The notes under the pieces: model-generated
The model's database searches: none
What the model was told of the DNA's origin: nothing
Seen by the model: the letters and a program-made list of their open reading frames with translations, nothing else
Part shown: in pieces, positions 8,020-30,006 of the stretch
Layout of the letters: the number at the start of each line of letters is the position of its first letter
How positions within the stretch are numbered: position 1 is the stretch's first letter
Translations under genes and position numbers: made by a program
Source: Lepidodermella squamata
Taxonomy: Eukaryota; Animalia; Gastrotricha
Assembly (NCBI GenBank): GCA_047495785.1
Contig: JBLDXI010000036.1
Location: forward strand, 682,001 to 746,000
Length of the DNA: 64,000 bases
Reading direction: 5' to 3'

Positions 8020-9603
8020 AGTAGTAGGGGGGGAGGAAAAGTTAACGGTTTTTCCGATTTGAATTTTTCCCGCGCGACCTTGACCTTGACACAACTACAC
8101 GACCTCGATTTTGCTGACGACCTCGCTCTACTCGCTACCTGTGCGAAACATCTCCAACAAAAAACCAACAAACTCAAACAAACCGCAGAATACGTCGGTC
8201 TCCAGATAAATGTAGCGAAAACCAAGGTAATGCGAGTCAACCTGCCAGATATCGGTGACAGCCTGAAAATCGACAACGAGAAGCTGGAAGAGGTGCGTGA
8301 CTTCCAATACCTGGGAAGTGTCATAAGCCTAGACGGCACTGGTGTTGACATCAAACAGAGGCTAAAGAAAGCTAGAGCGGCATATGCAACCCTCAACAAC
8401 GTCTGGCGGTCAAAAGAACTCACCCGCAAAATCAAGATCCGCATATTCAACGCAATCGTTAAAGCAATCTTGTTATACGGAGCAGAATGCTGGCGATACA
8501 CAACCGCTGATTTCGCAAAACTCGATGCATTTTACAATCGCTGCCTACGCAGGATATGTGGCATCCACTGGCCGAAAGTCATCAGCAACTACGAATTGCA
8601 CCGGCTGGTTGGCTGTCGACCTCTATCTCAGGAGATCAGACTGCGGCGATTGAAATGGCTCGGGCATGTCCTTCGCATGAAGTACGATCGCATCCCAAAA
8701 GTGGCACTATACTGGCAGCCCATCGGCCAGAGGTTCCGGGGTCGACCGAAGACCACTTGGAGGACAACCGTACAAAAAGACCTCGAGTCGCTCAATCTCA
8801 GCTGGGCGGAGGCGCTTAAGTTAGCCAAACAACGAGAGACATGGCGGGAAAAAATTAATAACATCTAAAAACCTGCTCTATCTGAACTACCTATATTATC
8901 TGTTTTCTGTCTATGAACTACGAAAATATGTCGTGGGCTGTATGTCCCTCACGGGATTTGGCATTGAATGACCTTGACCTTGAGCTAACCCTAACCCTAA
9001 CCCTAACCCTAACCCTAAGCCTAGGGCTTAACCCTAACCCTAACCCTAGGGCTTAACCCTAATCCTTAACCCTAACCCTAATCGATAATCCCTAACCCTA
9101 GCCGATAACCGATATCGATCAACCGATATTGATTGATTTTGAATTAATTTCCCGCCAAAATAGGCGTAACCCTAACCCTAATCCTTAACACTATTCTTAG
9201 GGCTTAACCCTAATCCTTAACACTATTCCTAGGACTTAACCCTAACCCTAACCCTAACCCTAGGGCTTAACCCTAATCCTTAACCCTAACCCTAATCGAT
9301 AATCCCTAACCCTAGCCGATAACCGATATCGATCAACCGATATTGATTGATTTTGATTTAATTTCCCGCCAAAATAGGCGTAACCCTAACCCTAATCCTT
9401 AACACTATTCCTAGGGCTTAACCCTAATCGATAATTCCTAACCCTAGTCGATATCGATTGATTTTTCCAACGGAAAAATAATTTGAAATTTTCCCGCCAA
9501 AAACTATTTTACCGCCAAATTATGACCTTGACACACACACACAATATTCCCGCCAAAACCCTAGTCAAAATTTGAATTTTCCAAAATTCCAACGGTCACT
9601 CGC
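8020..9603 (+). repeat. Left terminal inverted repeat of the Polinton, interrupted by a LINE; contains (CCCTAA)n arrays
   Basis: 8020-8089 plus 8984-9603 are the reverse complement of 28830-30006. Inner boundary at ...ccaacggtcactcgc. Confidence 0.92.
8090..8969 (+). mobile_element. 5'-truncated non-LTR retrotransposon (RTE-like LINE; RT C-terminal part to 8868 plus 3' UTR) nested in the left TIR
   Basis: Motifs DLDFADDLALL, FQYLGSVI, LLYGAECW, RRLKWLGHVLRM, RGRPKTTW. 14-bp duplication GACCTTGACCTTGA at 8076-8089 and 8970-8983; the right TIR has only one copy. Confidence 0.92.
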
Positions 9604-9752
9604 GTCATCTAACGGTCACTCCTATTTTTGAATTTTATGTCACCTCGTACTGTCACTTGCATCGAAATGTAATGAAGTGTCATGGTAATAAAAACGAAAC
9701 ACGAAAATATAACGCTCTATTTATTTACACTCGAAATAATGGTAAACAGGAA

Positions 9753-10028
9753 TTATTCGGAATCAATATCAGAAAAGAGCAGAGGCGAAGGATGTGGTTG
9801 TGGTGGTGGAGTAACCGTCTCGTCGCACGAATAGTGATTAGGATCGTAGAATAGACATAGCATTGCCATTATTTCGTCACAGCGTAGTAGCAAATCTTGG
9901 CCGCGGCAGGTTAGGTTGCGACGAATGAGAGGCTCAGGCTGATCCATTAGGGTTATGAGCTCCTCACATTGCAGTTGTAAGTCTTGAACGCGATGAATAA
10001 CGTCCCGAAGTAAAAGTTGATCCGACAT
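9753..10028 (-). CDS. Small Polinton protein (91 aa) with two LxCxE motifs; candidate Rb/pocket-protein binder
   Basis: LQCEE and LRCDE lie in an internal repeat (RVQDLQLQCEELITLM / RGQDLLLRCDEIMAML), followed by YSCDE, a Pro-rich stretch and an acidic SDIDSE tail. AATAAA downstream on the - strand at ~9720. Confidence 0.65.
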   Translation of the reverse strand: MSDQLLLRDVIHRVQDLQLQCEELITLMDQPEPLIRRNLTCRGQDLLLRCDEIMAMLCLFYDPNHYSCDETVTPPPQPHPSPLLFSDIDSE

Positions 10029-10095
10029 TAATGATTAAAATGCAAGTGAAAATGAAAACGAAAACCGCGTAAATGAATCGGCGAGATCGACCTGC

Positions 10096-10488
10096 TCAGT
10101 AATAATGAGGCATGCGATGCCAAGCAAGGTCTGGCGGTAGATGAAGATCAGACTCGCGAGTTCGGGGAATCACTCGGTAATTTGAAGATTCACCAACTGG
10201 AGGTGGGTGAGGCGGAGACCAAGCGGCGACCTTTCTGGCTAGATCGGTCTTCTTGAAGGCGTCTAGGGGAACACCCGCTCGAGAAATGAGCTCAACAACA
10301 GAATTGTAATGAAGCTTGGCATCCGGAGAATGAGAACTGGGTGATTTCGCCACAACTTCGATCATGGAAGTCAAAGGAATGTTGACCAATTCGTTGCCAT
10401 CGCGAATCAACGTGATAGAGGACCCATCCGATGTCAAAGTATACGTGCCTGTAGACGGCTGAGATTGTAGATAAGATAGAACTGACAC
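10096..10488 (-). CDS. Uncharacterised Polinton ORF, possibly the C-terminal half of the 10493-10915 gene
   Basis: 130-aa frame with no ATG start, lying 4 bp after the upstream stop. Removing one base near 10496 would fuse the two frames (...FSAHRAVSVLSYL...). Confidence 0.5.
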   Translation of the reverse strand: MSVLSYLQSQPSTGTYTLTSDGSSITLIRDGNELVNIPLTSMIEVVAKSPSSHSPDAKLHYNSVVELISRAGVPLDAFKKTDLARKVAAWSPPHPPPVGESSNYRVIPRTRESDLHLPPDLAWHRMPHYY

Positions 10489-10492
10489 AGCT

Positions 10493-10915
10493 CTATGGAG
10501 CTGAGAATCCCAAATTGGAAAACCGAGATGTTACAAATGATTTAACATCGAAAGGTTCCACGACAGGAGACGGATCCGCAGGCGCAGGCGTAGTCGCAGG
10601 GGGAGCGGGAGCTACGGGGGCAGGCTTGGGAACCTCGGCAGTCAAAGCCGGCTTGATAAAACGCACGTAGTTTTGCTTCAGCCTCTCGAGCTCGCCAAAT
10701 ACATGATTGTAGTCTCGAGCAGTCTGGGAATGAACATCCGGCTGATTCAACATCTCAGTCATCTGACCTTCGAGCTCCTCAACCTTGTCGTAAAACGGGC
10801 CATCAAACAGCTTCTGCTTGGTGACAGCACGACGTTGCAGAGAGGAAGCTGCGGTCTTTGTCGAAACAGGTGTATCTTGCATGAGCACGAGCTTGCGGCT
10901 AAACTTTTCAACCAT
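10493..10915 (-). CDS. Uncharacterised Polinton protein (140 aa; helical N-terminus, Pro-rich linker)
   Basis: ATG at 10915 overlaps the end of the upstream core gene. SRKLVLM start resembles ORFs I recall following the core protein in other Polintons. Confidence 0.6.
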   Translation of the reverse strand: MVEKFSRKLVLMQDTPVSTKTAASSLQRRAVTKQKLFDGPFYDKVEELEGQMTEMLNQPDVHSQTARDYNHVFGELERLKQNYVRFIKPALTAEVPKPAPVAPAPPATTPAPADPSPVVEPFDVKSFVTSRFSNLGFSAP

Positions 10916-11288
10916 CACGTTTACGGAGCGACAGAATACCGTCAATAACCGAAGGTAGGATGCTACCAGCAGCTGAAATAAGGAGAGGAATAAGCGGACC
11001 GTTTCCGTGCTGAATAAGAACGGATCGACTACTCTCGGGCGTCTTGACCTTGGAAACGCGGTCAATGGTTGCTTTATATGATCGGAGCTTCTTAACGGTT
11101 TTTGAGTCTGCCGATAAATTTTGACGAATTAAATTCAAACAGATTTCCGTTAGCAAAACAATGACACGTGTCGGGGCCAATGCAAGTAACCGTCGTCGCT
11201 GTCCGGGAGGTGCCTGGGTAAGCAAGCGTAAGAAATCAAGAGTGCGCCGCCTCTTTGAAGTCACCGAATGAGCCACTTTTCGAACCAT
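10908..11288 (-). CDS. Basic Polinton virion core / membrane-active protein with a protease-cleavage-like QxGxG motif
   Basis: Pattern LxxL...R..LL..A...LTEICLNL...KLRSYK...QHGNGPLIPLL followed by an amphipathic tail is typical of small Polinton core proteins. TATATAAA ~40 bp upstream. Confidence 0.75.
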   Translation of the reverse strand: MVRKVAHSVTSKRRRTLDFLRLLTQAPPGQRRRLLALAPTRVIVLLTEICLNLIRQNLSADSKTVKKLRSYKATIDRVSKVKTPESSRSVLIQHGNGPLIPLLISAAGSILPSVIDGILSLRKRDG

Positions 11289-11458
11289 TAGTAGATGGTA
11301 ATAAAAATAAAACGGTCACTAGAAACGGTTTATATAGTAATAAATCAGCTAACGGTTCGAACCAATCCATGTGTATAAATATATGACTTGAATGCAATCG
11401 AGATATCAATTCCTACAATTGTATTTCATTGGTAGTAGTAGCATAACATATTGGGAAC

Positions 11459-12130
11459 ATGGATACCTCCGTGCAGGAAACTTTGATGCAAGACGATGGT
11501 CCTGCCGCCTTCTCGAAACGCGTCGATGGCCCTCTGCTTCCGCCACGTGGTTCTAGTGGTGCTGGCGACTCAAATCGGAGTTATGGATCCCCTCATGAAC
11601 AGCAGCTCACTCGATTTCAACGAGCGCACTACACATTGGCTAAACAGTCGGTAACGAGCTGTAAAGATCCCAACTTTGTCATTCTGCGCAGAAATCGCGA
11701 CGAGAACAGCACCCTTGATCTCGAGTTCTTTGTTGGTCATGCAATCGAAATGAACAAGCTCTTCTTCACACGAAAAGGATTATATTTATCGGTTCGAGAA
11801 CTGCGAATGATTTACGAGAGCATGCAGGTGGAAGGTGGATGGGTTGACAAGATAAAGCAAGAGCTGAAACAGCCGCGCGGAAAGTTTTGTAATGGACCTA
11901 AACATCTCATCGGAGGGATGATTCATGCAAGAGTTTTCCGCCCAACTGGATCACAGCGCGCCTATGTTGATATCCGCCTTTACGTGAACAATCGAAACAA
12001 TCAAGCCGGACAACAAGAGCCACAAGAAAATTCGAGTGACTTTTCGCAGGACGGATTTTGCGCATCAGATGTGGTCTTTCTGGAGCTCCAGCACATGATT
12101 TACTACATGCTGTCGAACTTGAACGAATAG
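11459..12130 (+). CDS. Tandem PC4/Sub1-like ssDNA-binding / coactivator-like protein
   Basis: YVDIRLY and TRKGLYLSVREL resemble the PC4 motifs YVDIREY and KKGISL, one in each half. Divergent orientation; AATAAA at ~12211. Confidence 0.55.
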   Translation: MDTSVQETLMQDDGPAAFSKRVDGPLLPPRGSSGAGDSNRSYGSPHEQQLTRFQRAHYTLAKQSVTSCKDPNFVILRRNRDENSTLDLEFFVGHAIEMNKLFFTRKGLYLSVRELRMIYESMQVEGGWVDKIKQELKQPRGKFCNGPKHLIGGMIHARVFRPTGSQRAYVDIRLYVNNRNNQAGQQEPQENSSDFSQDGFCASDVVFLELQHMIYYMLSNLNE

Positions 12131-12259
12131 AGCAATCAAGCAAGCTACTTCGCGCGCCCAAACTAACATTGATCATATATCCGCGTGTAAATATGCTTCT
12201 CGAGTAATACAATAAAGTGAAAATCTGTGAAAAGTTCAGTCTTTATTAGCATGTCAATT

Positions 12260-13066
12260 TTACATAGTCAATGGCAGGTTCAGATTTGGTACATCATCCA
12301 CTTTAACAAAGACGTTGCCGGTGCGGGTACCGATAAAATTTCGAAATCGAAGTAACGGCGGGCATGACGCTGTGTTATCAATGAGAAGGTAACCAAATGG
12401 AACGCTTGTAGCAAGGTCGAAACTCTCTGAATCATCAAAGAAAAAGTTCAAATTAAAATGATGAGCAAAGCAAGGATCCTACCTTGCAAGAACCGCCAAT
12501 CCTTGGGCATAATCTGACGTGCCAGGTGAGAAAATTGTGTCATATCGCAGGGTGAACGGAACACAATAATGTAGCGAGCGTTCAGAGTCAGGTCGCGAGA
12601 GAACTTACCTCTAAGTAAAGAAGAACAAAATGAGATAATAAGGAACGATTAAAGGGAGAGATAGTGAAAACCTGGGGAAGAGGTTATTTTGGGCCATGAT
12701 AACACTGATCTGGCTGTGATGAGATCCTCGGTAAAACAATTCAGCAACCTGTTTCATATCTTTTGCATCGCTGTAGTTATCGTCAAATATTATTAGTTTG
12801 TGAGCCCCTCCTAAATAGTCAGCTTCATGAAATGATCCAATGTCGTCGCGAAATTCGATGGGAACGCCACGAGCAAGCAACACCTGCTGACTGAGCTCAG
12901 CATGTCCAGGTTGAGCAATTCCTCTGAACCAAACTATTCTATCCAAAGGTTTGTCGAAAGATTCGGGATAAAGCAGAATGTCTTTAATGAGTGTCGATTT
13001 TCCACCCTGACTCGGGGCGGAAAGGATTATAGTACAAGGTGATTGAAAAGCCGTTGTGAAGCTCAT
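12260..13066 (-). CDS. ATPase: A32/FtsK-like genome packaging ATPase, 3 exons (introns 12611-12671, 12427-12482)
   Basis: Walker A APSQGGKST, Walker B IIFDD. Splicing restores QNNLFPR|GKFSRDLTLNARY...LARQ...FLQ|ESFDLATSVPFGYLLID. Confidence 0.93.
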
Positions 13067-13084
13067 AGCTACTTGTTTTATTTT

Positions 13085-13588
13085 TCAAAATCGCTTCTTT
13101 TTATAGTGATCTCTCACAAAGCTAAGAACAAAGGCGTCATTCTGCTGCCTAGAATTTCTGCCGTGATTAGTGATTAAGGATACAATATTAGGTAAGGAAA
13201 CACCACGTGCCGACTGATGAAGGAACACCAAGCAGTATAAGCCACAGTGAATGCTGTCGTAAGCCTGAAGGCTACGGTGGTTATGTGATCGCAACTTTCG
13301 CCCACAGTTCGCCATATTACTTATGAAATGCTCGATCCTAACAGACCAGCTACTGGATTGTTGGCCGTAAGAGTCCATGAAGATGATCGATGAATCGGTA
13401 ACATGAAGAGCAATCCAATGTGACCCTGCTGACGAGCTGGGCGAGGCGTTCACAATCAGGAACAGAGGCTTTTGCGACGAGCCAAGATTTTCATAATAGG
13501 CAAGCGAGTCGCAAGGAATAGTAGCGAAAATGCCTTGGTTAATAACTGGGTCCGAGGCAAGAAAAGCGGTTAATTGATTCGTATTCAT
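13085..13588 (-). CDS. PRO: Adenain/Ulp1-like cysteine protease (virion maturation)
   Basis: GSHWIAL, FMDSYG and LQAYDSIHCGLYC give the His/Asp/Gln/Cys catalytic set. Confidence 0.93.
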   Translation of the reverse strand: MNTNQLTAFLASDPVINQGIFATIPCDSLAYYENLGSSQKPLFLIVNASPSSSAGSHWIALHVTDSSIIFMDSYGQQSSSWSVRIEHFISNMANCGRKLRSHNHRSLQAYDSIHCGLYCLVFLHQSARGVSLPNIVSLITNHGRNSRQQNDAFVLSFVRDHYKKKRF

Positions 13589-14928
13589 CAGAAAAAGTTG
13601 TGAATGACAGTGCGGTTCGACTGGAGCTCCATCACCCGGTGTTTATACTGCATTACGGCAATAAGAGTTGCCGGGTTCGGCAGCTTTTTGCCGAAAACTA
13701 GGTTAATTGCCATCTGACCCGTGGTAATAAGGCGGCCATTCGGGTCGTTGTCCAGTGACAGCTGAAATGCGAGCACTGTGCCACCACTTTTAACAAAATC
13801 GCCCCGACTAATATTGACGCATTTCGAATTCGAATCGGGAAAAATGGTGTCTTGCATTAGTTGATAAGCCCTAGCGCAATCTAAAGTACCAAAGTTCATG
13901 GCCAATGGAGTGCCACCCACAGCTTTCCCATCAATTGTTATCGTTATATTTTGAAGGTCAAAATGTTGAAAGTTGAAAGGGTTGGCTGTAGCCGCTCCCT
14001 GAAGAGCTGAATCCTCGACCATAACTAAATTTGGAATGATTTAAATTAAACATGAATTCCGAGCCGAAAACTTACCTAAAATGAGCTTTTCCGGAATCAC
14101 ACCCATGACTACATTGTTGAGATGGATTGATGTCATGTTAGTGGGCAAATTGAAAGGTTTGGCCAGGGTATGGTTGAAAATGTACTTTGCAGGGGTTTCA
14201 ACTAGTGCCCTCTCCAGAGCCATCGTTACCTCAGGAACAACTTCGACACGTTTCACCAACAAAACAGCTTCCAGTAGTTTGAACTCGTAATCTTTCAGAT
14301 CATCGGACATCAAGAAAAAATCCGGTTTATGCATAGTTAACTTGATTCGAACACTCGTTTGGGGGATCAAATATTTCTCCTGATTGAAGAAGTCCGTTTG
14401 AATTTTCCCGCATAACGAGATAACGGGGTTCTTTTCTATATCATTGACAAGGCTTAGTCGCTGCACGAAGCCGGAATTAGGTGCCTTCAACTGGTCGAAA
14501 GATCCGAATGAGTCTGGATGCCACGCAACGTTACTCAACTTGGCATTTTGCACATCTTCCGAGGCCGAAAGTAAATGCTCAATGTACGCAGAAATCGGAT
14601 GTAACGAGGTGTTTTGCGTTATCAGATACTCATTCACGTAAACGTGGCAATCGGAAAACATTGAATTTAAAAAATTGTTAACAGGCGCACAACAAAAGTT
14701 GTTCTTTGTCATGCCGGCAGCAGTTGAAGTGATTGAGGCTTTGATGGAAAGGTAAGTATGACTGAGGTCGGTGAATGCTTCCGATGCGGGGATCGTAAAG
14801 GTGATTTGTTGCGCGCCCGAAATGGATGCCATGGGATGGCACTCCGTGGTGTGAGTACCAGTGACCTCATTGGTGACAGGCGGGGAAGCGAAAATAGCCA
14901 ACTCTGCCCTAATTGCGTGATCAGACAT
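13588..14928 (-). CDS. MCP: Major capsid protein (double jelly-roll), 429 aa, 2 exons (intron 14025-14075)
   Basis: ELAIF, FTDLSHTYL, PVNNFLNSMFS, DFFNQEKYLIP. Splicing gives IPEKLILVMVEDSALQG...NPFNFQHF. TATATATAAA ~40 bp upstream. Confidence 0.93.
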
Positions 14929-14983
14929 TGTAAATTCTCGGAATAATGTTTTATTAATAATTCATCGCTTTATATATATCAAA

Positions 14984-15397
14984 TCAGAACAGAATGCGCG
15001 TAGATTTAGCTGGCCTTTTCCCACGCTTAAATTTTCGTTTGCCGGAACCGTACTGACGAGCTAGGTGACTGATTGCATCCTTTCCTACTGTTTTTAGGCC
15101 TTCCATACCTCGATTCTTGAAAACTTCCGCCATGTTATATTCAGATCCAGCTTGCTGCCGCTCAGAAATATCCGAAGCAATGTTTGTTGCAGTTGAAGCA
15201 GCTGAAGTGAAAAGTTTAGGCAGAAAAGGTATTAAAGTGTGACGAATAAAGCTGCGGATATATGTTCCCAGTCCATTTCCAACTTGAGGCATCAATACGA
15301 TGGATGGTCCACTAAACGGTTGTATACCGCTTCCGCCTCGTCCAGTTTGGCTAATGAACCAGTTGTAGTAGGCATCGGAAGAAATGGGTGCTCGCAT
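14984..15397 (-). CDS. Polinton core protein with repeated QxGxG cleavage-like motifs and a basic C-terminus
   Basis: QTGRGG, QVGNGLG followed by an amphipathic helix, QYGSGKRKFKRGKR. Lies between mCP and MCP. Confidence 0.78.
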   Translation of the reverse strand: MRAPISSDAYYNWFISQTGRGGSGIQPFSGPSIVLMPQVGNGLGTYIRSFIRHTLIPFLPKLFTSAASTATNIASDISERQQAGSEYNMAEVFKNRGMEGLKTVGKDAISHLARQYGSGKRKFKRGKRPAKSTRILF

Positions 15398-15400
15398 TGC

Positions 15401-16523
15401 TTAGCGACGAATGGGCCGAATATGGATGGTGACAAGAGATTTGCCTTCCTTATATACAACTTTCTGTCCCGAGTCTAGGCACATCAAAATTGAAATAGTA
15501 TCCACAAATTGAGTGCGAACAGGGTGATAAAACGGCATTGAGCCAGCAAAACTGGTCATGCTGTATTTTGTGGCGGAAGCTGAACCCGAAGCTGGAAATA
15601 CGCGGAGTAATGGTACAAATTTGTCACCACATATTGTGTGTTCAATCAAATCGCTATAGCAATAAACCAAAGGGCTGTGAAAATGGATCTGTGGCTTGAA
15701 CTCGGAAAAAATTGGAATCTCATCGTACGTCGGGCGGTAATTTACTGCAGCTACCAACTCTGATTCACCACTTTCATTTTTCCGATGCATGTTTAGTCTC
15801 AACTTGCCATCGTCACAGTCCTGGTAAGTCGGAATCTTACCGTGGGCCATTGGCATCTTTGAGCCTTCCTTCCCCGGCAAAATAAATCGCAACATGTGAC
15901 TAAACAGCGATAAAAACTCGCGCTCATGGCGTATAGAGTCTTCCAACTCAAGATCCTCGTCATGTGGCGGAATATTCAGCAAAAGAGTCCCACGCTCAAA
16001 CCCTAGTATTTGAGCAATAAACTCGGGTAAATAGAGACCACAGCCAGGTTTTAAGTTGAATCTAATACGACTCCTTGATTCCTCATGACTCAAAGTCATG
16101 CCGCTCCAATCGGGGAATTCCGCTGTCATATGATTCAGAAAGTCGTCCATGGTTTCGTAAATTCTGCCGCCAACAGTACATTGCGAAAATTCTTCCGGTG
16201 TGTCAAACGGTGAATCATTCAAATTCGCACGCTCGAACCATGACGTTTTGAACAAATAGAAATGAGATTTCTTAATGGAAATCACTTGAGAAGGTGTGCA
16301 GACTTCCAAAAGCGCCGCTTCATGGCTCCCTATGCATCCCAAATCTATGAAAATCGAAACATGGTAAGAACAAAATAATAATATCTGAATCCGCCATACC
16401 GATAATTTCCGGGAGCTTGACTTTAAATTCTGCCGCATTATTGTTGCTAAAAAGATCCATTGACGCGTGAGAAGGAAGTGTCAAAATGAGATCTTTGCCG
16501 TAATAATTATTTGCTGGAAGCAT
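15401..16523 (-). CDS. mCP: Minor capsid protein (penton, single jelly-roll) with a large central insertion, 2 exons (intron 16345-16399)
   Basis: LTLPSHASMDLFSNN...FKVKLPEII|DL...EAALLEV at the N-terminus; YCYSDLIE...GDKFVPLLR...VTIHIRP at the C-terminus. Confidence 0.88.
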
Positions 16524-16728
16524 TCGTAGTTGTCGATTGATAGATTAGCGGATAAAAAAACCACGTCAATATCAGCAAAATTAAGGTAAGGGTAACAGTC
16601 GTAATTTGTTTCGTTCGTTTAGACAAGGAACTGGCAAAGCTTGGGGATGGTAGCAGCGGCGCAGGCAAAATTAGTGGTCTCTGAATGCGAGACAGGTCAG
16701 GAGTCGAAAGTGAGTGCATTTTCCCCAA
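16507..16728 (-). CDS. Small putative single-pass membrane protein
   Basis: 73-aa frame between INT and mCP with a strongly hydrophobic stretch (VTLTLILLILTWFFYPLIY); true start uncertain. Confidence 0.4.
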   Translation of the reverse strand: MGKMHSLSTPDLSRIQRPLILPAPLLPSPSFASSLSKRTKQITTVTLTLILLILTWFFYPLIYQSTTTNASSK

Positions 16729-16746
16729 CCTGATTTACTATCCTTT

Positions 16747-17796: not shown

Positions 17797-17818
17797 TATC
17801 ACAAGTAAAAATGAATTT

Positions 17819-20800: not shown

Positions 20801-23094
20801 GAAAGCCGGTTTGTGTCATAGTCATCCAAGGTTGGGAAGTCTCGCTCGTTATCGGAAAGGAAATTCGCTGATGTCAGCAATTTATAGGGAAAAAATTCCT
20901 TTCCAGTTGCATTCGCATCCTCATCCAGACCGAAGCAGTGGAAAAGCGAAGCCAACGATGACATGGAGAGGAGGTAAAAGTCTCGAAATACGATTGCTTT
21001 TTTCTCAACAGATAGCTCGATAATTGTGTTATTTTTGTAAATATGTTCGAACTGATAATCGTGCTGTTGTAACCATTTCAGGACCATAAAATTATCGAAT
21101 CTATAGCGAGATTAAATTAAATTTCCGAAATCTAACTCTTCGATTTTCCCACCTTGAACCATTATGAGAGAGAAGTAAAATTCCAGAATACTTTTCTCGC
21201 AGCAAAAATTTCATAAACTGGTTTACACAGGTGGAATCCGCACCAGTTGAAACGAAGATCTGCTGGCGCGGGTCGTCACCAGTACACGATTTGGGACACG
21301 TTGCGGTGACAAGCATGTGTTGACACGAGTCACAAAACATGTTCAACACTATCACGACTGGCACTAGTTCTCCGGTTTCCAACTGAATTGTTTCGGTATC
21401 CCAAGCTCCGGCAATTCGCAGAGGATCTTTGCGAAGCCTGCCTGGTTGAATGACACAGCTGTGTTCCTCGTCAGCCTCCTCCGAGCTTATTGGCCCGTTA
21501 CAAGTTCGACACGTCCGAGATTGACCTATAGTCACATTGTAGCAAAAAATTAAGATGGATTTTTTCCCATTTCATCAACTCACAGTTATGTTTTCCCTTT
21601 TGCGCTATCCCAATTTTCCTACCGCACTTGCCGCACATGAAGTAGGACTGGCAAATGGTCGCAGCTCCGGGTGTTTCAGGTGTCTGGTGATTCATGAAAC
21701 ACTGGGCCCCGTGGAAAAATAAGCCACAACTCCCGCATAACATTGTTCGTTCGTTCGAGTCACGACATGTTGCGCCGGCTCGCTGGCACCTGTTGCACTT
21801 AAAACGGCACGTGTGCTGCAGGTTGTTTTTCTTGTGCAACATGAAACATCGCGGGCACATCATCTTCTCCCCAGAAATAGTGCTAATGCCTGTTTCATTT
21901 TTTAGGAATGAATTTCAAATTATGCATTTTATATATTTCTCCTACTTGTTAATCCAACATAATGTCCCACGCTTCGATCGTACCGCCCACTTTCGCGATG
22001 TGATGCCAAGGCTCTGTTGTTGATATAACCGATCAAAATTTTTCGCTCATCGGCAATTGTGAGTCCTGCTTCCGGATGTACAGCCATCGTTTGCTTATCC
22101 ATGAAGTTGTAAATAACACCTGTTTATTTCCAAAACTTTTTATCGAATTTTAGTTTGTTTAAATTAATTATTGCCTCGATAGGGTAAGCCAATCGTATCA
22201 ATAACCCGCTTGAATTCGTCAAGACCATATGCCATTTGATTAGGTTGGATTCCCGCGGCATTCATGAGTTTCAGTGCTAGTTCGCCCTGATATGCTTTGA
22301 TTGCAGCCCTTTCCAGATTCGCTAGTTCGGATGTTGACATGCGGTCTTTCGAAAATCCTGGCCGTAGTCTGTCATAGTCGCCGTGAGGTTGGCAGCCCGG
22401 CCGGGGTTGTTTGTGATCACGATATAACAGAGAATGTGCGATTGACCTGAAGAGACAGTGATTATCAGCATCATTTTCCACTGGAAGGACTTCATTGTGA
22501 CCCATTATGAAGTCAACCATTGTTTCCTCAAGTCGGCGTCGTTTACCACCCTTGCCACCGTAGCCTTGCTCGCCATCTTCCAGTTCACCCACTGCAATTC
22601 TATAGATGTTGTAGCTCCAGCCTAATTTTAATAATGAAAATCATTCCAAGTTCCAGTAATATTAAATCGAACCGTTGTTCATGGCTATTGAAAGTCTAGA
22701 CTGCATCACCGAGTTTATCTCGTCCATGATCATAGCACCAGTCAATTCCTGTACTTGAAGGTATTTCGTATTTACTGGAAAATTCAAGCTGGGGTGGAAA
22801 AGTTCAACCCGAACGTAATCCCTAATTTTCAGTTAAAATGTTTCATTTTTACTCTTAAATAACGAGTTCCTACCTTGGATGGAAAGAGTTTCGCAATTTC
22901 TCTACCAAACCTTCGAATTGCGAATTAATTTTCGATAAAAGTTCCAGTATTTCCAAGCCGCTTTCATCATCCTCATCGGCGTCGTCTTCAAATCCAAACC
23001 CTATCTGATCTGAAGGATCGATCGCTTGCGAGGAATATTTGAAAACGTCCATCTTGAATCGCGGAGAATAGCAGAAAAACCCGTGAAAATCCAT
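17819..23094 (-). CDS. pPolB: Protein-primed family B DNA polymerase (~1382 aa) with N-terminal OTU-like domain, Zn fingers and Vsr-like insertion; 17 exons
   Basis: Introns: 22822-22873, 22622-22672, 22120-22174 (GC-AG), 21890-21945, 21526-21583, 21101-21152, 20552-20603, 20391-20448, 20116-20174, 19851-19908, 19685-19742, 19382-19436, 19122-19172, 18917-18970, 18307-18607, 18144-18200. The spliced frame (4149 nt) gives DTET, HNGSRFD, YCQSDV, FMGGRTE, DVNSLYP, KLLLNTAYGKLG, YTDTDS, APKTY and TIPFGY. Start codon is tentative. Confidence 0.93.
18346..18580. repeat. 32-bp minisatellite (~7 copies) inside a pPolB intron
   Basis: Unit ccctgagcctcagctacc(c/t)taacctgagc(t/a)tc starts at 18357, 18389, 18421, 18453, 18485, 18517 and 18549. 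Confidence 0.9.
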
Positions 23095-24461
23095 ATTTTC
23101 ACTAATGAAGATGGAAAATAGTTGTCCGATTTTCACGAATAATGATAATAAATTGGGTTCGGTTAAAAACTCATAGGGATATAATGTTCATTTGAAAACT
23201 GTCAAGTTTCATTCCTCGAGAACGTTAGCTTATTTAAATGACTTTTCAACGGTTTACTCGTTTCCGAATGATGTCTCCAAATTCATATTTTTATTGCTTA
23301 TTTAGCAACTGTTTCTGAATTTTTATTGTTGATCAGCACGCGTTGTAATAAAAAAGCGACCCGATTTCAAGTGTTTCTCAATTTTTATTACAATATCCGC
23401 ACATTAAATCACGTACAATCGGGTTGCTTGAAAACTTTTATTACTTAACGGCGCACCATATTGACACATGTCATCGGGCAGCGTCTAAAAAAAAAAATAC
23501 AATGAATTTTGATTGATTTATGTCTTTAAGAACTTACACTTTTCCGGATCCTGTTCCATATATGATCTGAATGAATGAAATGGAAATTTAGCTATTTTGA
23601 ATTAAATGTAGTCATGAAAAATCATACCTGAGGATCCCATCGATTTCCAGTGTGTGTAAAACGGTCTATTTCTAATTTCTATGAATATCTTCGTTCGAGC
23701 AAACTGCGACGGAATGTGATGATTCCGTCAACATTACAGGCATTGGCGAAACAGTACAACGATGAACTTGAATTGTGGATAACTGCTCCAGATTAGAATT
23801 GATTCCCCAGAGTTTCATTGCGAAATCTTAATTTTTATTACAGCAGTTCTTCTTTCCATAGCATCGGAACAGCCTAAGATCATAGACGCTAAATTTAAGA
23901 ATAAATGTACGCAGTTTCAATGGCATGCTACTACTACATAGTAGCATGGACGTAGGCTATTAACATTCAGTCGAGTGTGTGTCGCGTCCAATTTTTATTT
24001 CTCATATAGTATCGCATATAATATAGTTTCAAGCTGCGTCAGTGGTGTAGTTAAATCTTTAATGCCAGTCACTATTATCCACCCCGACGAAAATACATTC
24101 ACGCATGTTGAACCATTGGTTACATTTTTACACCGCAGTGCCGGAAATCTAGTATTATCATATATCACTCGCGCACAGAGTTTGGCAACACGAGCTATTA
24201 AGGCCTCAGTTATGTTTATTCCAGTTGGCATCTTTCCCGCAAGAGTACTGTTCAGACTATCGGTCTGTCACTTTTTTCCGGTCTTTGCAAGACCAGACCT
24301 TTTTGCCCTTGAATAAGGCCAAGACCCAGACCGAAATTACAACCAGGTCTTTAAACCAAGACCAAAGACCAAAGACCGGAATAATAATTACTCGTTTCTT
24401 TTATTTCCTTGATTAAATTCTCTTCTCCGCGTTCAAGTAAACGTTTTCAGAAATTTTTAAA

Positions 24462-27131
24462 TTAACATTCAGAAGTGAGATGTTTATTGCCACGGCACAC
24501 CATTGAACGGCAGATGGTGTCAGGTTTAAGCCTCAAACGGCGAGGCGATACGGAATGGCTCGATAATGAAAAGATTCTTTCGGCCCATGCGCTACTTGCG
24601 CAAATTGCGAAGATTCGCCGCACTAGCAACGATAAATTTGGAAAGCGGCGATGATGAGATTTCCAAAAAGCTAGGCCACAAGGTAGATCGACGTCGTGTA
24701 CGCTGAGCAGGTCGAGATAGGAAGCAACCTCGCTTCTTAGGGTCGAATTTGGCACTTGCTTTTTATCATGAGCCGTTACTTGTTTTGACATGAAATTAGT
24801 GAGAAACTTCGGCGTAGTCGATGAAACAATAGCAGACGCCGCAGCTTGCGGTGACGAGGAAGCAGCAGAATTGCCATTTAACTGAAACGAATCGAAAAAT
24901 GCACTTCATCCAAATTAATATTAATAAAAGTTATCAACCTCGCTCAGATATTCGTTGAGGCAAAAGCATTCCTTGACCATAATGCTGGTGATAATGCTTG
25001 TAAACTTTTCGACGTCAACATAATTTGGCAGAAATTTCAAGCCATAAGCCGGGTCCAGAACTGACGCTAAGATAAAATATGGATCTGAATAGGTTCGGCT
25101 AAGGTCCGAGTTCGTTTCCTCGCCCTCGACTTCTCCAGCTGATATCTCTGCCATGCGATCAGGATTTATTAGATTCTTCATTATTCCACCAAATCGTCGC
25201 GAACAAGACTCACGTAACGTCGAAGCCAGCTAAAAAAATTTAATTATTTTTTTTTAATTTAATTCCGATTTTTATTTTTATTATTATTTATTTATCTTTG
25301 AATTTTTGAGAACATTTTTAAATTAAATTACAAGTCTTGTCATTAAACATTTTTTAAACGCTTTGAATTTTCGAAGTTTCCAAAACAATTTTCTAAATTT
25401 TCTAAAACCTTTGCTTACTTGCGAAATATCGCTGAATTTCGATTTGAACTCGTAGAAGTGATCACGAAGTGCCAACACAGACGGTACAACGCAGCTCATG
25501 GTCGCGTCATTTCTTTGCACTAGCAGCGTGACTTCGTCGACAGGTGACAGTAAACAAACAAAGTCCTGCAATTTAGCGCGCTCTTGTTGACTCAGCTCGA
25601 GTTCCTTCCGCTTAATTTTGAGGAGACCCGACTTCAGCTTATTCGTGTCCACTTTCAACAGCACTTTCACGAGACGCAGCTGGCCATTCCATCGAGTCGC
25701 ATTCTTTTGCGGAACAACGGGTTGTCCATCCAAAACTTCCGCCAACGGCCCGCTTGTATGCATTAGAGATGTTATCGAATCACACTTACCCAACAGAGCT
25801 TTCAATTCAGCTGACATGGCTTTTAATCCATCGCAAACAGTCAATTGAAAGGTATGACCAAAACAGCTAATCCGATTAAGGGAGGCGGTTTCAACGAAGG
25901 CATCTAGCTCGTTCTCGGACACCTCGATATCATTATTAGCCTCATCGTCGTCTTCGTCATCTGCTTCATACGATCGCGAGTCATCTCCCAGCTCGGACTC
26001 AGTGGCCAATTTACCATTCAGCATGACGCGGAAAGCTTTCAGCACATTAGACCCATTATCAGTTGTTGCCCTTGAATTAAAATTAAATTTAAAATTTAAT
26101 AATTTAATTCGACATTTATTTCAAAATTTATTTCAAAATTTATTTCAAAATTTAATTCAAAATTTATTTCAAAATTTAATTCAAAATTTATTTCAAAATT
26201 TAATTCAAAATTTATTTCAAAATTTAATTCAAAATTTATTTCAAAATTCAATTCAAAATTTATTTCAAAATTTAATTCAAAATTTAATTTAAAATTTAGC
26301 ACGTGTTCACCTTGCGATATCTTCGTTGGTTATTCCCATTTCCGCCAGAATTTCCTTGTAGGTATCAGCAATGTTCGTCCCAGTGTGGGATCCCACGACA
26401 TGTTTGAAAGAAATGAGACAGTGTTCGACGTCGAAATCGGAATTAATCATGGTCACATAAAATGCCATGAATGCCCGGAGTCTCCGATCGGTCCATAAAT
26501 CAATCTGACTGGCAGAAAACCCGCGATTTCTTTTCAGCATCGCCTTAATTTTGACCTGCAATTCGTCAACAACAGATTCGATTTCGGTTTTTAGGCCTTC
26601 CGAACCAAGATCACGGTAACGTTGGTCTGCGTCTTTCATCAATTTTCGAAATCGAGGATTTTCGACGATTTGATTAGCAATGCCTGTTTCCACAACTAGA
26701 AGTGCGATGTCACGGTTTAGCTGCCGTTGCCTCGGGTCGTTTGGCTTGTATTCTGCCAGGGGTCGAGCAAATTTTCGAATGCTTGATTGCTCGATTTTGG
26801 TGCATAGTCTCGGTTTTCGGTGTGGCAACGTTTTGAAAATTTTGTTGTGAACTCGTTTCAGGTGACGCCGGAAAGAAGAAGACTCAGAATCAGTGATTGC
26901 GACAACTGTGGGTACGCAGTGCTTGCATTCTGCTGTCCACTTATCATCGGACAGTTTCTTCCAATTAGAAAAGTGTTCAAATACCGAGAAGGTCGGGTGG
27001 TCTGAAGAGATAGGAGTTAGAGTTTTATCGAGGGATTCAGCTTCGCTACCAGAATCAGATTCTTCAGATCCGGAGCAGCTTTCAGCACTGGTTAATGCAG
27101 CCAATCGCTTTCTCTTAGCAGGTTTAGGCAT
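24462..27131 (-). CDS. hAT transposase (BED finger, DDE, dimerisation domain), 727 aa, 4 exons (introns 26071-26310, 25230-25418, 24882-24938)
   Basis: WTAECKHC...RRHLKRVH, IDLWTD, TTDNGSN, CFGHTFQL, TRWN, SSAWAERIFS. The frame is open after splicing. Confidence 0.92.
26085..26300. repeat. AT-rich 12-bp minisatellite in hAT intron 1
   Basis: Tandem aaattta(a/t)ttca units. Confidence 0.9.
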
Positions 27132-28025
27132 TGGCTCTCTTGAATGAAAACTGACAATTTAAAAATGACGAAAAATAATGAAATAAATAACTCATACAAA
27201 TTTTTCTGATGAAATTCAGATGTTTATTGACTGCGACCATGCTATTTTCCAACCGAGCAATCTGCGACCAGGCAGATTTAAATAACCGGATGTCTTCATA
27301 GAGTCGTAGCCTTTTGAGAATGAACACGTCCGACTAAATGCATGACCTATTTTTTGTTTTTAATCCTCGTCAATCAAAGTCAAAAACCAGAAAATTAAGA
27401 CCAAAAGACCCAGACAGGCCGAAATTTCCTCTCTGGTCTTGGGCAGACCGAAGACCACCAAATTGACCCAGTCTTGGTCTGGTCTTAGTCTTACTCCGAA
27501 GACCAGGCCGATAGTCTGGTACTGTTTACCAGGCGAATCTTAGATACCTTTATGGCAGTGTTGTCTTGTCGCTGTAGTTTCCTTGCCAGTTTTCGCCCAT
27601 AAATTTTTGCCAGTTCAGGATTCTTCGTGAAAAGCACGACTTTCCCGTTTTTAAATAGCAAAGCGTTGAAGTGCGGCTCTTTAATGACGAGAGCATTTGG
27701 AAACTTTTGTTTAAGCTCAACCATTTTGAAGAGGTGAATAATTTTCCGCAGATCAAAATGTACCCCCAGCGAGAGTGTGGAAACAACATTTTGCACGGTA
27801 ACATCAATTTCAAGCATTTAATATTCCAAGAAAAATGAGAAAATGAGGTGACATGACGAATTTACTTGCTTTTTATTACATTGTATAAATTATAAATGGT
27901 GCCGAGATGCAACGCTCAGTTTTCAAAAAACATTTTTGGCGAAATCTTCCAAATTTATATCAACTGTAAAATACCTTGTCATATTCTTACGCATCATTTT
28001 ACTTGGCAACTATACTTATCCTGAA

Positions 28026-28295
28026 ATGGCTAATCCTCAAATAGCTGAAATTTTCTTTCAACTATTTGTAAACCTGTAAGTATTTAATGTCAAAAAATTC
28101 AACATACCTTATATTTTTCTTTCTTTCTTCAGCTACGACGAGGCAGGTCAAATGTATGATCACTTGCAGAACTCAGTAGCCAGCTACAACACTATCATCC
28201 AGATATTATGGGACATTCACGGATTACTCGTACCTCATCCTCCTCCACAGCCCCCTAGTCCTCCTGTGGAGGAGGAGGAAAATGCCAACTGGTGA
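28026..28295 (+). CDS. Small spliced Polinton ORF (70 aa; intron 28076-28132) with a Pro-rich/acidic tail
   Basis: Strong GTAAGT donor and polypyrimidine-CAG acceptor. Product MANPQIAEIFFQLFVNLYDEAG...PHPPPQPPSPPVEEEENANW. Not in the ORF track. Confidence 0.6.
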
Positions 28296-28464
28296 CCTGT
28301 ATAAAAAAAAAAAATAATCAACATTATTACAATATTATTAAACATTATATTAACCTTTGTATTTCGAAATCGCTATCGAAATCTAATCGAAGTAAATGTA
28401 AAGATTGCATTCCATGGCTTTTCTCAATCCAAGGATACAAATAGAAAAATGCAGTCGAGTTTTA

Positions 28465-28689
28465 CTAACTTTTGTATGCTGAAATGTCTTTCATTACCAG
28501 AGCGGAATCTACACATATGACGAAAAGGTTGACGCCGCATTTATTATCATAGCAAGTTGCCGTTATGTCAAGCTGACATTTTAAGAATATTCGCAGCTGC
28601 CCGTTGGCGAGACATAAAAGCTTGGCTTGGTCTCGTAAAACGTGACAATTCCAGAGGGTACTTTCACTCTTGCAAGATGACTCATGCAT
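28465..28689 (-). CDS. Small Cys-rich hypothetical Polinton ORF (74 aa)
   Basis: ATG-started ORF just inside the right TIR, 7 Cys, no recognised family. Confidence 0.3.
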   Translation of the reverse strand: MHESSCKSESTLWNCHVLRDQAKLLCLANGQLRIFLKCQLDITATCYDNKCGVNLFVICVDSALVMKDISAYKS

Positions 28690-28829
28690 TGGTTACTTTT
28701 GCGTCACATGCCCATTACATTTTAGAAGTTTGAATTTATGTATGCCGGAAGAGTCAAGGTCATATTTTGGTATATTGGCGCTGAAATAATGGTTGGCGGG
28801 AAAGTTTCAATTTTCCTTTTCAAAAACTA

Positions 28830-30006
28830 GCGAGTGACCGTTGGAATTATGGAAAATTCAAATTTTGACTAGGGTTTTGGCTGGAATATTGTGTGTGTGT
28901 CAAGGTCATAATTTGGCGGGAAAATAGTTTTTGGCGGGAAAATCAATCGATATCGATTAGGGTTAGTGTTTAGGATTAGGGTTAAGCCCTAGGAATAGTG
29001 TTAAGGATTAGGGTTAAGCCCTAGGAATAGTGTTAAGGATTAGGGTTAGGGTTACGCCTATTTTGGCGGGAAATTAAATCAAAATCAATCAATATCGGTT
29101 GATCGATATCGGTTATCGGCTAGGGTTAGGGATTATCGATTAGGTTTAGGATTAGGGTTAAGCACTAGGAATAGTGTTAAGGATTAGGGTTAAGCCCTAG
29201 GAATAGTGTTAAGGATTAGGGTTAGGGTTACGCCTATTTTGGCGGGAAATTAAATCAAAATCAATCAATATCGGTTGATCGATATCGGTTATCGGCTAGG
29301 GTTAGGGATTATCGATTAGGGTTAGGGTTAAGGATTAGGGTTAAGCCCTAGGAATAGTGTTAAGGATTAGGGTTAAGCCCTAGGAATAGTGTTAAGGATT
29401 AGGGTTAGGGTTACGCCTATTTTGGCGGGAAATTAATTCAAAATCAATCAATATCGGTTGATCGATATCGGTTATCGGCTAGGGTTAGGGATTATCGATT
29501 AGGGTTAGGGTTAAGCATTAGGGTTAAGCCCTAGGAATAGTGTTAAGGATTAGGGTTAAGCCCTAGGAATAGTGTTAAGGATTAGGGTTAGGGTTACGCC
29601 TATTTTGGCGGGAAATTAAATCAAAATCAATCAATATCGGTTGATCGATATCGGTTATCGGCTAGGGTTAGGGATTATCGATTAGGGTTAGGGTTAAGGA
29701 TTAGGGTTAAGCCCTAGGAATAGTGTTAAGGATTAGGGTTAAGCCCTAGGAATAGTGTTAAGGATTAGGGTTAGGGTTACGCCTATTTTGGCGGGAAATT
29801 AATTCAAAATCAATCAATATCGGTTGATCGATATCGGTTATCGGCTAGGGTTAGGGATTATCGATTAGGGTTAGGGTTAGGGTTAGGGTTAAGCCCTAGG
29901 CTTAGGGTTAGGGTTAGGGTTAGGGTTAGGGTTAGCTCAAGGTCAAGGTCGCGCGGGAAAAATTCAAATCGGAAAAACCGTTAACTTTTCCTCCCCCCCT
30001 ACTACT
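28830..30006 (-). repeat. Right terminal inverted repeat: five ~183-bp higher-order units of TTAGGG variants, then a (TTAGGG)n run and a ~70-bp terminal cap
   Basis: acgcctattttggcgggaaa recurs at 29054, 29230, 29413, 29596 and 29779. Near-pure TTAGGG at ~29865-29935. Confidence 0.93.

What the first reader, a model, noticed from the sequence alone, without database searches (positions are those of the whole stretch)
8020..30006. Complete Polinton-type virus combining intron-rich genes, telomere-like ends and its own transcription/cell-cycle module
Seen: intact ends, a 6-bp TSD and all six core genes with open spliced frames. It also has a TBP-like gene, a tandem PC4-like gene, a double-LxCxE protein, E2F-like sites and TTAGGG arrays in the TIRs, and at least 21 introns. 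Established: the canonical Polinton core is pPolB/INT/MCP/mCP/PRO/ATPase plus small core proteins, usually with few or no introns. Inference: this is a recently integrated lineage that has adopted host-like gene structure and chromosome-like ends and may control its own transcription and host S-phase. I do not know of this combination being described, but I cannot search the literature.
Basis: partly seen in the sequence, partly recalled or inferred. Interest (0 to 1): 0.93.

Follow-up and report, generated by a model that had tools for sequence, protein, structure and literature searches.

The report
Intron-rich Polinton with TBP-like gene

Summary
Window 8020-30006 is a real Polinton/Maverick-type element. 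It has perfect 70-nt terminal arms, a 6-bp target duplication (CATAAC) and about 1.1-kb inverted repeats built from TTAGGG-like runs. Tools identify pPolB, an rve integrase and an adenain-like protease. The packaging ATPase is seen only by eye, as a P-loop ORF with Walker A and B. The two capsid genes are candidates by position only.

Introns are real. I read seven GT..AG intervals (51-61 nt, one about 307 nt). Skipping them brings split polymerase motifs or reading frames back into register. All 19 ORF junctions tested can be bridged without a frameshift.

The TBP-like gene is real: both TBP repeats pass Pfam's cut-off, identity to cellular TBPs is about 35-40%, and no close kin were found. 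It is interrupted once by a nested hAT transposon. The left inverted repeat carries a truncated non-LTR retrotransposon, so the element is not fully intact.

- The double-LxCxE ORF exists, but such 'Oncoid' ORFs are already described in adintoviruses.
- E2F-like motifs exist, one per repeat unit.
- 'PC4-like' is unsupported.

I did not examine sibling copies, because fetching them is barred.

Verdict: a divergent, unusual variant of a known kind, of moderate interest.

The parts
8014..8019 (.). Left copy of the 6-bp target-site duplication (CATAAC)
   Evidence: Read directly. It matches 30007-30012.
8020..9603 (.). Left terminal inverted repeat. It has a unique 70-nt terminus, then TTAGGG-like runs and about 2 copies of a 214-bp unit, then a unique inner part. 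It is interrupted once by a roughly 0.9-kb 5'-truncated non-LTR retrotransposon.
   Evidence: The insertion's ORF hits RVT_1 and DUF6451 and is flanked by its own direct repeat.
9753..10028 (-). 91-aa ORF with two LxCxE motifs in similar local contexts. The first is followed by a CK2-type acceptor. Candidate RB-binding 'Oncoid'-like protein.
   Evidence: No Pfam hit.
10096..11288 (-). Three overlapping or adjacent ORF pieces of unknown function with a proline-rich tail. Both junctions can be bridged by short GT..AG intervals.
   Evidence: No significant family hit.
11459..12130 (+). 223-aa ORF, the only long plus-strand ORF in the element. Its function is unknown.
   Evidence: No Pfam, PDB or homologue hit. 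No internal repeat. AlphaFold2 model pLDDT 37.5.
12263..13066 (-). Candidate packaging ATPase: a P-loop protein with Walker A and B, in three pieces separated by two GT..AG intervals of 61 and 56 nt. An AATAAA follows the stop.
   Evidence: Only P-loop-level PDB hits. No Pfam or PHROG hit.
13085..13588 (-). Adenain-like (C5/Ulp1-type) cysteine protease, a single ORF
   Evidence: Pfam Peptidase_C5 E 6.7e-6 and Peptidase_C48 E 0.0045.
13588..14928 (-). Candidate major capsid protein, in two pieces (295 and 144 codons) separated by one 51-nt GT..AG interval
   Evidence: Position and size. The sequence signatures are recalled from my own knowledge only. No tool hit. Model pLDDT 28.8.
14984..15397 (-). 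137-aa ORF with a basic C-terminus, possibly a small core or minor virion protein
   Evidence: No family hit.
15401..16523 (-). Candidate minor capsid (penton) protein, in two pieces separated by one 55-nt GT..AG interval
   Evidence: No homologue or family hit.
16747..17859 (-). Retrovirus-type (rve) integrase, a single ORF
   Evidence: Pfam rve E 9.4e-8. The only homologue found is 26% identical.
17822..23187 (-). [quoted passage not shown] An OTU-like Cys motif and the Exo I-III and Pol A-C motifs are seen in order. All 13 junctions can be bridged by GT..AG intervals.
   Evidence: Pfam DNA_pol_B_2 E 1.9e-13. The PHROG DNA polymerase profile is matched colinearly by two pieces. Motifs read. 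Junction counts.
18347..18577 (.). 32-bp x 7.2 tandem array inside the roughly 0.3-kb interval that splits the Pol C motif
23998..27817 (-). TBP-like gene with two TBP repeats, about 190 codons of its own and no intron seen. It is broken once, by insertion of a nested hAT transposon.
   Evidence: Pfam TBP E 2.3e-11 and 9e-6. PDB TBPs down to E 1.9e-9. Best of 1.84 billion representatives is 38% identical.
24465..27158 (-). Transposase ORF pieces of the nested hAT transposon (zf-BED ... hAT dimerisation domain). This is a host transposon, not a Polinton gene.
   Evidence: Pfam zf-BED E 2.5e-4 and Dimer_Tnp_hAT E 2.1e-14. Its own inverted repeats and 8-bp duplication were read. A relative lies at 45697-46596.
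28830..30006 (.). Right terminal inverted repeat: a unique inner part, 5.4 copies of a 183-bp unit, TTAGGG-like runs and a unique 70-nt terminus. Each unit holds TTAGGG-like runs, two TATCGAT cores and one TTTCCCGCCAAAA.
30007..30012 (.). Right copy of the 6-bp target-site duplication (CATAAC)

Best explanation
The region is one integrated copy of a divergent Polinton/Maverick (polintovirus or adintovirus-like) element, about 17.8 kb of its own DNA plus two later transposon insertions.

Shown: matched inverted ends; a 6-bp target duplication, as an rve integrase makes; genes for a protein-primed family-B polymerase, an integrase and an adenain-like protease; and short GT..AG introns in core genes. 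A P-loop ATPase is seen by eye only.

Inferred: the element integrates through its integrase and replicates from its ends by protein priming. The termini begin with a reiterated trinucleotide, which fits a jumping-back start. It packages DNA with the ATPase into a capsid built from the two candidate capsid proteins. Nearly all genes lie on one strand and are tightly packed, and a poly(A) signal follows the ATPase. Expression is therefore most likely from long nuclear Pol II transcripts processed by the host spliceosome.

The accessory set suggests, but does not show, that the lineage supplies part of its own transcription initiation and ties its expression or replication to the host RB/E2F S-phase programme. 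That set is the TBP-like protein, the double-LxCxE ORF, and the repeat units carrying E2F-like and TATCGAT motifs. The TTAGGG-like arrays may recruit host telomere-binding proteins. In this copy the TBP-like gene is interrupted and the left repeat is disturbed, so this copy is probably not fully functional.
For: - Ends and duplication.
- Core domains.
- Introns: the halves of the Exo II, Pol B and Pol C motifs lie on either side of GT..AG intervals of 52, 54 and about 307 nt, and come into frame and register when these are skipped.
- The same holds for the MCP-like gene (51 nt), the penton-like gene (55 nt) and the ATPase (61 and 56 nt).
- 16 of 19 junctions have a 44-72-nt frame-keeping GT..AG interval, against 10.7 +/- 2.9 for decoy dinucleotides. 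The other three have longer ones.
- The chosen intervals are 68% A+T, against 58% for the gene strand.
- By contrast, the integrase, protease and 137-aa ORF are uninterrupted. That pattern argues against random decay.
- TBP repeats.
- Motifs in the repeats.
- Nested transposons with their own duplications.
Against: - No tool confirmed the capsid genes or the ATPase family.
- The generic splice-signal statistics are weak: 10 of 255 decoy pairs do as well, and earlier versions had no power.
- There is no transcript evidence.
- The spliced models were not joined or searched as wholes.
- Only one copy was seen, so the accessory genes may be peculiar to it.
- LxCxE motifs are no commoner than chance overall.
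- The E2F-like and TATCGAT counts are inflated by tandem repetition of one unit.
- The inverted repeats differ by about 3% and by indels.
Confidence: 0.8

Rival explanations
1. A dead, decaying Polinton copy: the fragmentation of pPolB, ATPase and the capsid candidates into many ORF pieces reflects stops and frameshifts, not introns.
For: Two transposons have inserted since integration or in the parent. The inverted repeats have diverged. The generic GT..AG bridging test is only weakly better than decoys. There is no transcript evidence.
Against: Seven intervals that I read directly begin with GT and end with AG, and six of them cluster at 51-61 nt. Skipping them brings split conserved motifs and reading frames back into exact register. 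No junction of 19 needs a frameshift. Roughly 0.4-1.1-kb ORFs elsewhere in the element are unbroken.
Confidence: 0.08
2. A one-off chimera: the core is a Polinton, but the TBP-like gene, the LxCxE ORF and the plus-strand ORF are host DNA or cargo picked up by this copy alone, or an assembly artefact, and say nothing about the lineage.
For: Only one copy was seen. None of these ORFs has a detectable close relative. Nematode Mavericks are known to carry variable host-derived cargo near one end (bioRxiv 10.1101/2022.07.12.499685).
Against: All of them lie between matched ends and one target duplication. The TBP-like and LxCxE ORFs are on the same strand as the core. The TBP-like protein is only about 35-40% identical to cellular TBPs, so it is not a recent copy of a canonical host TBP. 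It has no intron, unlike the intron-bearing cargo of the nematode elements. A hAT insertion with a clean 8-bp duplication inside it argues against misassembly.
Confidence: 0.15
3. A Polinton-derived gene cluster on its way to host domestication: intron gain reflects long vertical residence and host-type expression, not a virus that still moves.
For: There are many spliceosomal introns of a length close to that of a likely host intron nearby. Core genes of nematode Mavericks are reported to be intronless.
Against: The full module set, perfect 70-nt termini and an intact 6-bp duplication are those of a mobile copy. Domestication normally keeps one gene, not the ends and all modules.
Confidence: 0.07
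4. The TTAGGG-like runs and the E2F-like and TATCGAT motifs in the inverted repeats are by-products of satellite expansion of one 183/214-bp unit and have no function.
For: All copies derive from one unit. Copy number differs between the ends, about 2 against 5.4. The telomere-like runs are degenerate and lie inside a unique 70-nt terminus, so they are not the physical ends.
Against: The unit combines three recognisable motif types in fixed order. E2F-like motifs also occur in the unique terminal and inner parts of both repeats.
Confidence: 0.4

Closest known systems
Polintons/Mavericks (Kapitonov and Jurka 2006; Pritham et al. 2007; capsid genes per Krupovic et al. 2014, PMC4028283)
   Same: Both have pPolB plus an rve integrase, an adenain-like protease, a P-loop ATPase next to the protease, terminal inverted repeats, a 6-bp target duplication, and a size of about 15-20 kb without the nested insertions.
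   Different: The core genes carry many short spliceosomal introns. The inverted repeats are built of telomere-like and promoter-like motif units. There is a TBP-like gene. The proteins are very divergent: the integrase's only hit is 26% identical.
Adintoviruses and related midsize linear dsDNA viruses (Starrett et al. 2021, PMC8502044)
   Same: They are Polinton-type elements tied to animals, with small LxCxE 'Oncoid' ORFs. A TBP-like gene is drawn on the map of one relative with an adintovirus-like PolB.
   Different: Oncoids there usually lie upstream of PolB and have paired CxxC motifs. Here the ORF is at the far end and has none. That paper's main text has no word beginning 'splic' or 'telomer', and its only 'intron' is a group II intron maturase. 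I did not test similarity to adintovirus virion proteins.
Nematode Mavericks (Widen et al., bioRxiv 10.1101/2022.07.12.499685)
   Same: They have the same core gene set and a variable accessory region near one end.
   Different: There the core genes are described as intronless and the cargo genes have introns. Here it is the reverse: the core genes are split and the TBP-like gene is not.
Adenoviruses (own knowledge)
   Same: They have inverted terminal repeats that begin with a reiterated trinucleotide, protein-primed replication, adenain, an LxCxE early protein acting on RB, E2F sites in early control regions, and heavy use of host splicing on long transcripts.
   Different: They have no integrase, no target duplication, no telomere-like arrays and no TBP gene of their own. 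This is a likeness in how it may work, not membership.
Herpesviruses with telomeric repeats at genome ends or at the latent origin (HHV-6, Marek's disease virus, EBV oriP; own knowledge), and Tetrahymena Tel-1/Tlr elements with telomeric repeats at their ends (own knowledge, not found in the held literature)
   Same: Host-telomere-type hexamer arrays lie near the ends of a DNA virus or virus-like element.
   Different: The virus families and integration mechanisms are unrelated. Here the arrays are degenerate and subterminal, and a function is untested.
hAT transposons
   Same: The nested element has zf-BED and hAT dimerisation domains, short inverted ends and an 8-bp duplication, and a second, short copy lies in a host gene 18 kb away.
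   Different: Nothing unusual. It matters only because it interrupts the TBP-like gene and could be mistaken for Polinton genes or an intron.

Membership tests
Polinton/Maverick | [quoted passage not shown] | tested here: met
   Pfam DNA_pol_B_2 E 1.9e-13 on one piece. Two pieces are colinear on a PHROG DNA polymerase profile. The Exo and Pol motifs were read in order.
Polinton/Maverick | Retrovirus-type (rve) integrase | tested here: met
   Pfam rve E 9.4e-8, 32.7 bits against a cut-off of 32.6.
Polinton/Maverick | Terminal inverted repeats and a 6-bp target-site duplication | tested here: met
Polinton/Maverick | Adenain-like cysteine protease | tested here: met
   Peptidase_C5 E 6.7e-6, above the cut-off.
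Polinton/Maverick | FtsK/HerA-type packaging ATPase | tested here: inconclusive
   Walker A and B and the usual position next to the protease. No family-level hit in Pfam, PHROGs or PDB.
Polinton/Maverick | Double jelly-roll major capsid protein and single jelly-roll penton protein | tested here: inconclusive
   Candidates by position and size only. No profile, PDB or homologue hit. The single-sequence model is unusable, pLDDT 28.8.
Adintovirus-like lineage | PolB with an N-terminal OTU-type domain | tested here: inconclusive
   An OTU-like catalytic Cys motif is seen by eye in one upstream piece. No Pfam OTU hit even at E 10.
Adintovirus-like lineage | Virion proteins recognisably similar to Alpha or Beta adintovirus proteins | not tested
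   This would need animal-virus comparators, and fetching them is barred. The searches with the element's own proteins returned nothing named.
Adintovirus 'Oncoid' ORFs | A small ORF with LxCxE, usually followed by a CK2 acceptor and near paired CxxC (PMC8502044) | tested here: inconclusive
   Two LxCxE motifs, with a CK2-type acceptor after the first and no CxxC pairs. The motif count is at chance level overall.
TBP family (PF00352) | Two tandem TBP repeats in one polypeptide | tested here: inconclusive
   Both repeats pass Pfam's cut-off (43.8 and 25.9 bits against 22.9). They lie on either side of a nested transposon, so no single open frame holds both in this copy.
PC4/Sub1 family (PF02229) | Sequence or fold match to the PC4 single-stranded-DNA-binding domain | tested here: not met
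   No Pfam hit even at E 10. No PDB hit at E 1. No homologues. No internal duplication. The model, pLDDT 37.5, is too poor to compare folds.
E2F binding sites | Match to the 8-base E2F consensus; binding by E2F/DP | tested here: inconclusive
   The motif is present 12 times in the repeats. Binding is not testable here, and the copies are not independent.
hAT transposon (nested element) | zf-BED and hAT dimerisation domains, short inverted ends, 8-bp duplication | tested here: met
   A second copy has its own 8-bp duplication.

The most novel reading that the evidence does not exclude
This copy may represent a Polinton lineage that has become a fully 'nuclear-style' virus. Its core genes would be expressed only through the host spliceosome. 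It would bring its own TBP-like initiation factor and an RB-binding protein. Its inverted repeats would double as S-phase-responsive control regions (E2F-like and DRE-like motifs) and as docking sites for host telomere proteins. That combination is not described for Polintons in the literature I could search.
Probability: 0.15. Interest if true: 0.85.

Novelty: new variant of a known kind. Interest (0 to 1): 0.58.

Why it matters
Polintons are seen as ancestors or close kin of several eukaryotic DNA virus groups, yet how they are expressed in the nucleus is almost unknown. If a lineage has core replication and capsid genes that depend on many host-spliced introns, three things follow:
- it has lived long in the nucleus;
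- it has an adenovirus-like expression strategy;
- intron-blind ORF callers will miss or fragment such elements, which may explain the near-absence of relatives in protein databases.

A virus-encoded TBP-like factor, together with RB- and E2F-type motifs, would give a concrete and testable picture of how such an element times itself to host DNA synthesis. Telomere-like arrays in the ends would add a parallel to herpesviruses.

On present evidence only the anatomy is shown. The regulation is conjecture, and this copy is itself damaged.

Tried and rejected
HOMOLOGUE SEARCHES
- The plus-strand ORF and the penton-like ORF found nothing.
- The integrase gave one hit at 26% identity.
- The representative-library search with TBP repeat 1 found 206 distant TBPs and none close. 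Their names did not help.

STRUCTURE
- AlphaFold2 without an alignment failed on the MCP-like N-half (pLDDT 28.8) and on the plus-strand ORF (37.5). I therefore ran no fold search.

PROFILE AND PDB SEARCHES
- PDB sequence searches with the capsid candidates and the ATPase gave nothing meaningful.
- PHROGs and relaxed Pfam scans added only polymerase colinearity.

SPLICE STATISTICS
- Three generic GT..AG statistics had little or no power. A constrained version is marginal. The case for introns rests on intervals read directly.

HOST AND RNA GENES
- An exact look-up of a flanking ORF failed to identify the host.
- Rfam and tRNA scans found nothing.

LITERATURE
- Kapitonov and Jurka 2006 and two reviews are not held. 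I therefore could not check whether intron-bearing Polinton genes or telomere-like inverted repeats were already noted there.
- My recollection of telomeric repeats at the ends of Tetrahymena Tel-1/Tlr elements could not be confirmed.

READINGS REJECTED
- The BED/hAT ORFs are not Polinton genes, and the 3.3-kb stretch is not an intron: it has its own inverted ends and an 8-bp duplication.
- The TBP-like gene is not a recent copy of a canonical host TBP: identity is too low.

Full report
WHAT IS THERE

The interval 8020-30006 is bounded by arms 8020-8089 and 29937-30006, which are 100% complementary over 70 nt. The same six bases, CATAAC, lie on both sides. The termini begin with a reiterated trinucleotide.

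Inside the unique 70 nt, each end continues as an inverted repeat made of degenerate TTAGGG-type runs and a tandem unit. There are 214 bp x about 2 on the left and 183 bp x 5.4 on the right. A unique inner part follows, which still aligns but with about 3% substitutions and two indels.

All 26 matches to two tandem telomere units in the 64-kb window lie in these repeats, against none expected. The G-rich strand points towards each terminus.

Each unit also holds one TTTCCCGCCAAAA and two TATCGAT cores. Twelve of the window's 26 matches to the 8-base E2F consensus lie in the repeats, against 12.0 +/- 3.1 expected for the whole window. Eighteen of the 28 TATCGAT matches also lie there. Because these are copies of one unit, the counts overstate independent evidence.

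NESTED TRANSPOSONS: THE ELEMENT IS NOT INTACT

The left inverted repeat carries one insertion of a 5'-truncated non-LTR retrotransposon. Its ORF hits RVT_1 and DUF6451, and it has its own flanking direct repeat.

In the right half, ORFs with a BED zinc finger and a hAT dimerisation domain belong to a roughly 3.3-kb hAT transposon with its own short inverted ends and an 8-bp duplication. A short relative of that hAT, with its own 8-bp duplication, sits at 45697-46596 between two halves of a host receptor ORF. The family has therefore been active in this genome.

Counted breaks:
- TBP-like gene: one insertion.
- Left inverted repeat: one insertion.
- Core genes: no stop or frameshift need be assumed if the intervals below are introns.

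GENES

Nearly everything is on the minus strand. In order from the right end:
- The TBP-like gene (23998-27817). Two TBP repeats both pass Pfam's cut-off and lie on either side of the nested hAT.
- pPolB (about 17822-23187). Pfam DNA_pol_B_2 hits one piece. Two pieces are colinear on a PHROG polymerase profile. The exonuclease and polymerase motifs can be read in order.
- An rve integrase.
- A two-piece penton candidate.
- A 137-aa basic-tailed ORF.
- A two-piece MCP candidate.
- An adenain-like protease.
- A three-piece P-loop ATPase followed by AATAAA.
- A plus-strand 223-aa ORF.
- Three pieces of unknown function.
- The 91-aa double-LxCxE ORF.

Several genes abut or overlap by a few bases.

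The capsid assignments rest on position, size and sequence signatures that I only recall. Every tool test was blank or unusable.

INTRONS

I read seven intervals directly. Three lie in pPolB, at the Exo II, Pol B and Pol C motifs. One lies in the MCP candidate, one in the penton candidate and two in the ATPase.

Each starts with GT and ends with AG. Six are 51-61 nt. One is about 307 nt and contains a 32-bp tandem array. In each case the two sides come into frame when the interval is skipped, and for the polymerase the two halves of a conserved motif meet in register.

Over 19 junctions, 16 have a frame-keeping 44-72-nt GT..AG interval, against 10.7 +/- 2.9 for decoy dinucleotide pairs; 10 of 255 decoys do as well. 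The other three junctions have longer intervals. Looser statistics had no power.

The integrase, the protease and the 137-aa ORF are unbroken, so the interruptions are not spread as decay would spread them.

A count near 20 is plausible, but it is not verified one by one.

The pieces were searched one by one by reference, and the joined step was left out.

THE TBP-LIKE GENE

Repeat 1 aligns to cellular TBPs in the PDB at E about 2e-9. Repeat 2 aligns weakly to archaeal TBPs, E 2e-4.

Against 1.84 billion representative proteins, the best match to repeat 1 is 38% identical (E 1e-13), and only 4 hits reach 1e-10. The top hits are singletons from a mite, a plant and metagenomes.

It is therefore a long-diverged TBP-family member, not a fresh copy of a canonical host TBP. 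I saw no intron in it.

OTHER ACCESSORY CLAIMS

- LxCxE. The two motifs sit in similar local contexts, and a CK2-type acceptor follows the first. There are no CxxC pairs. The motif is no commoner than chance over six frames.
- 'PC4-like'. No support was found. The low-confidence model shows strand-strand-strand-strand-helix elements, which I do not regard as evidence.

HOST

The flanks hold tandem GABA-B-like/ANF-receptor ORFs, a FLYWCH ORF and a Laminin_G_3 gene with a likely 56-nt intron.

I take the host for an invertebrate animal, though an early-diverging fungus is not excluded. It could not be named. I therefore kept all the bars for animal proviruses.

LITERATURE

- LxCxE 'Oncoid' ORFs are described for adintoviruses, and 'TBP' labels a gene on a map of a related virus (PMC8502044).
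- Core genes of nematode Mavericks are called intronless, while their cargo has introns (bioRxiv 10.1101/2022.07.12.499685). That is the reverse of what is seen here.
- I found no open paper describing intron-rich Polinton core genes, telomere-like inverted repeats or a TBP gene in a bona fide Polinton. The founding paper and two reviews are not held.

VERDICT

This is a real, divergent Polinton/Maverick with genuinely intron-rich core genes, telomere-like motif-laden inverted repeats and a TBP-like gene. The copy is damaged by two nested transposons. The regulatory story is inference from motifs.

Noticed in passing
window 45697-46596: A short (about 0.9 kb) non-autonomous relative of the nested hAT, 84-86% identical at its ends and with its own 8-bp duplication (CACGATCA). 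It lies between two ORF halves of a host ANF-receptor/GABA-B-like gene (44572-45720 and 46579-47847), which it appears to split.
   Followed up: partly
window 3838-4602, 30115-32472, 44572-47847, 50440-52716, 55304-56980: A tandem cluster of long, mostly single-exon ORFs with ANF_receptor ligand-binding domains. The closest PDB match is GABA-B receptor subunit 1 (E about 4e-11). The Polinton has landed inside this cluster.
   Followed up: partly
window 9081-9458 and 28946-29865: Each inverted-repeat unit holds two TATCGAT cores, like the core of the insect DNA-replication-related element. Two full palindromic copies lie in the body, at 17157-17164 and 18863-18870.
   Followed up: partly
window 8020-8028 and 29998-30006: The element's termini begin with a reiterated trinucleotide (AGTAGTAG). 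This is the arrangement expected for a jumping-back start of protein-primed replication.
   Followed up: no
window 18347-18577: A 32-bp tandem array (7.2 copies, 97% matches) lies inside the longest polymerase intron.
   Followed up: partly
window 26075-26298: A 12/24-bp A+T-rich tandem array lies inside the nested hAT, between its BED-finger ORF and the next ORF piece.
   Followed up: no
window 42677-43369 (-) and 59943-60821 (+): Two host ORFs: one with a FLYWCH zinc finger, and a Laminin_G_3 gene. The latter has a likely 56-nt GT..AG intron at 59939-59994, close in length to the element's introns.
   Followed up: partly
window 12263-12290: An AATAAA lies about 15 nt after the ATPase stop. 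The plus-strand 223-aa ORF converges on it from the other side, about 130 nt away.
   Followed up: no
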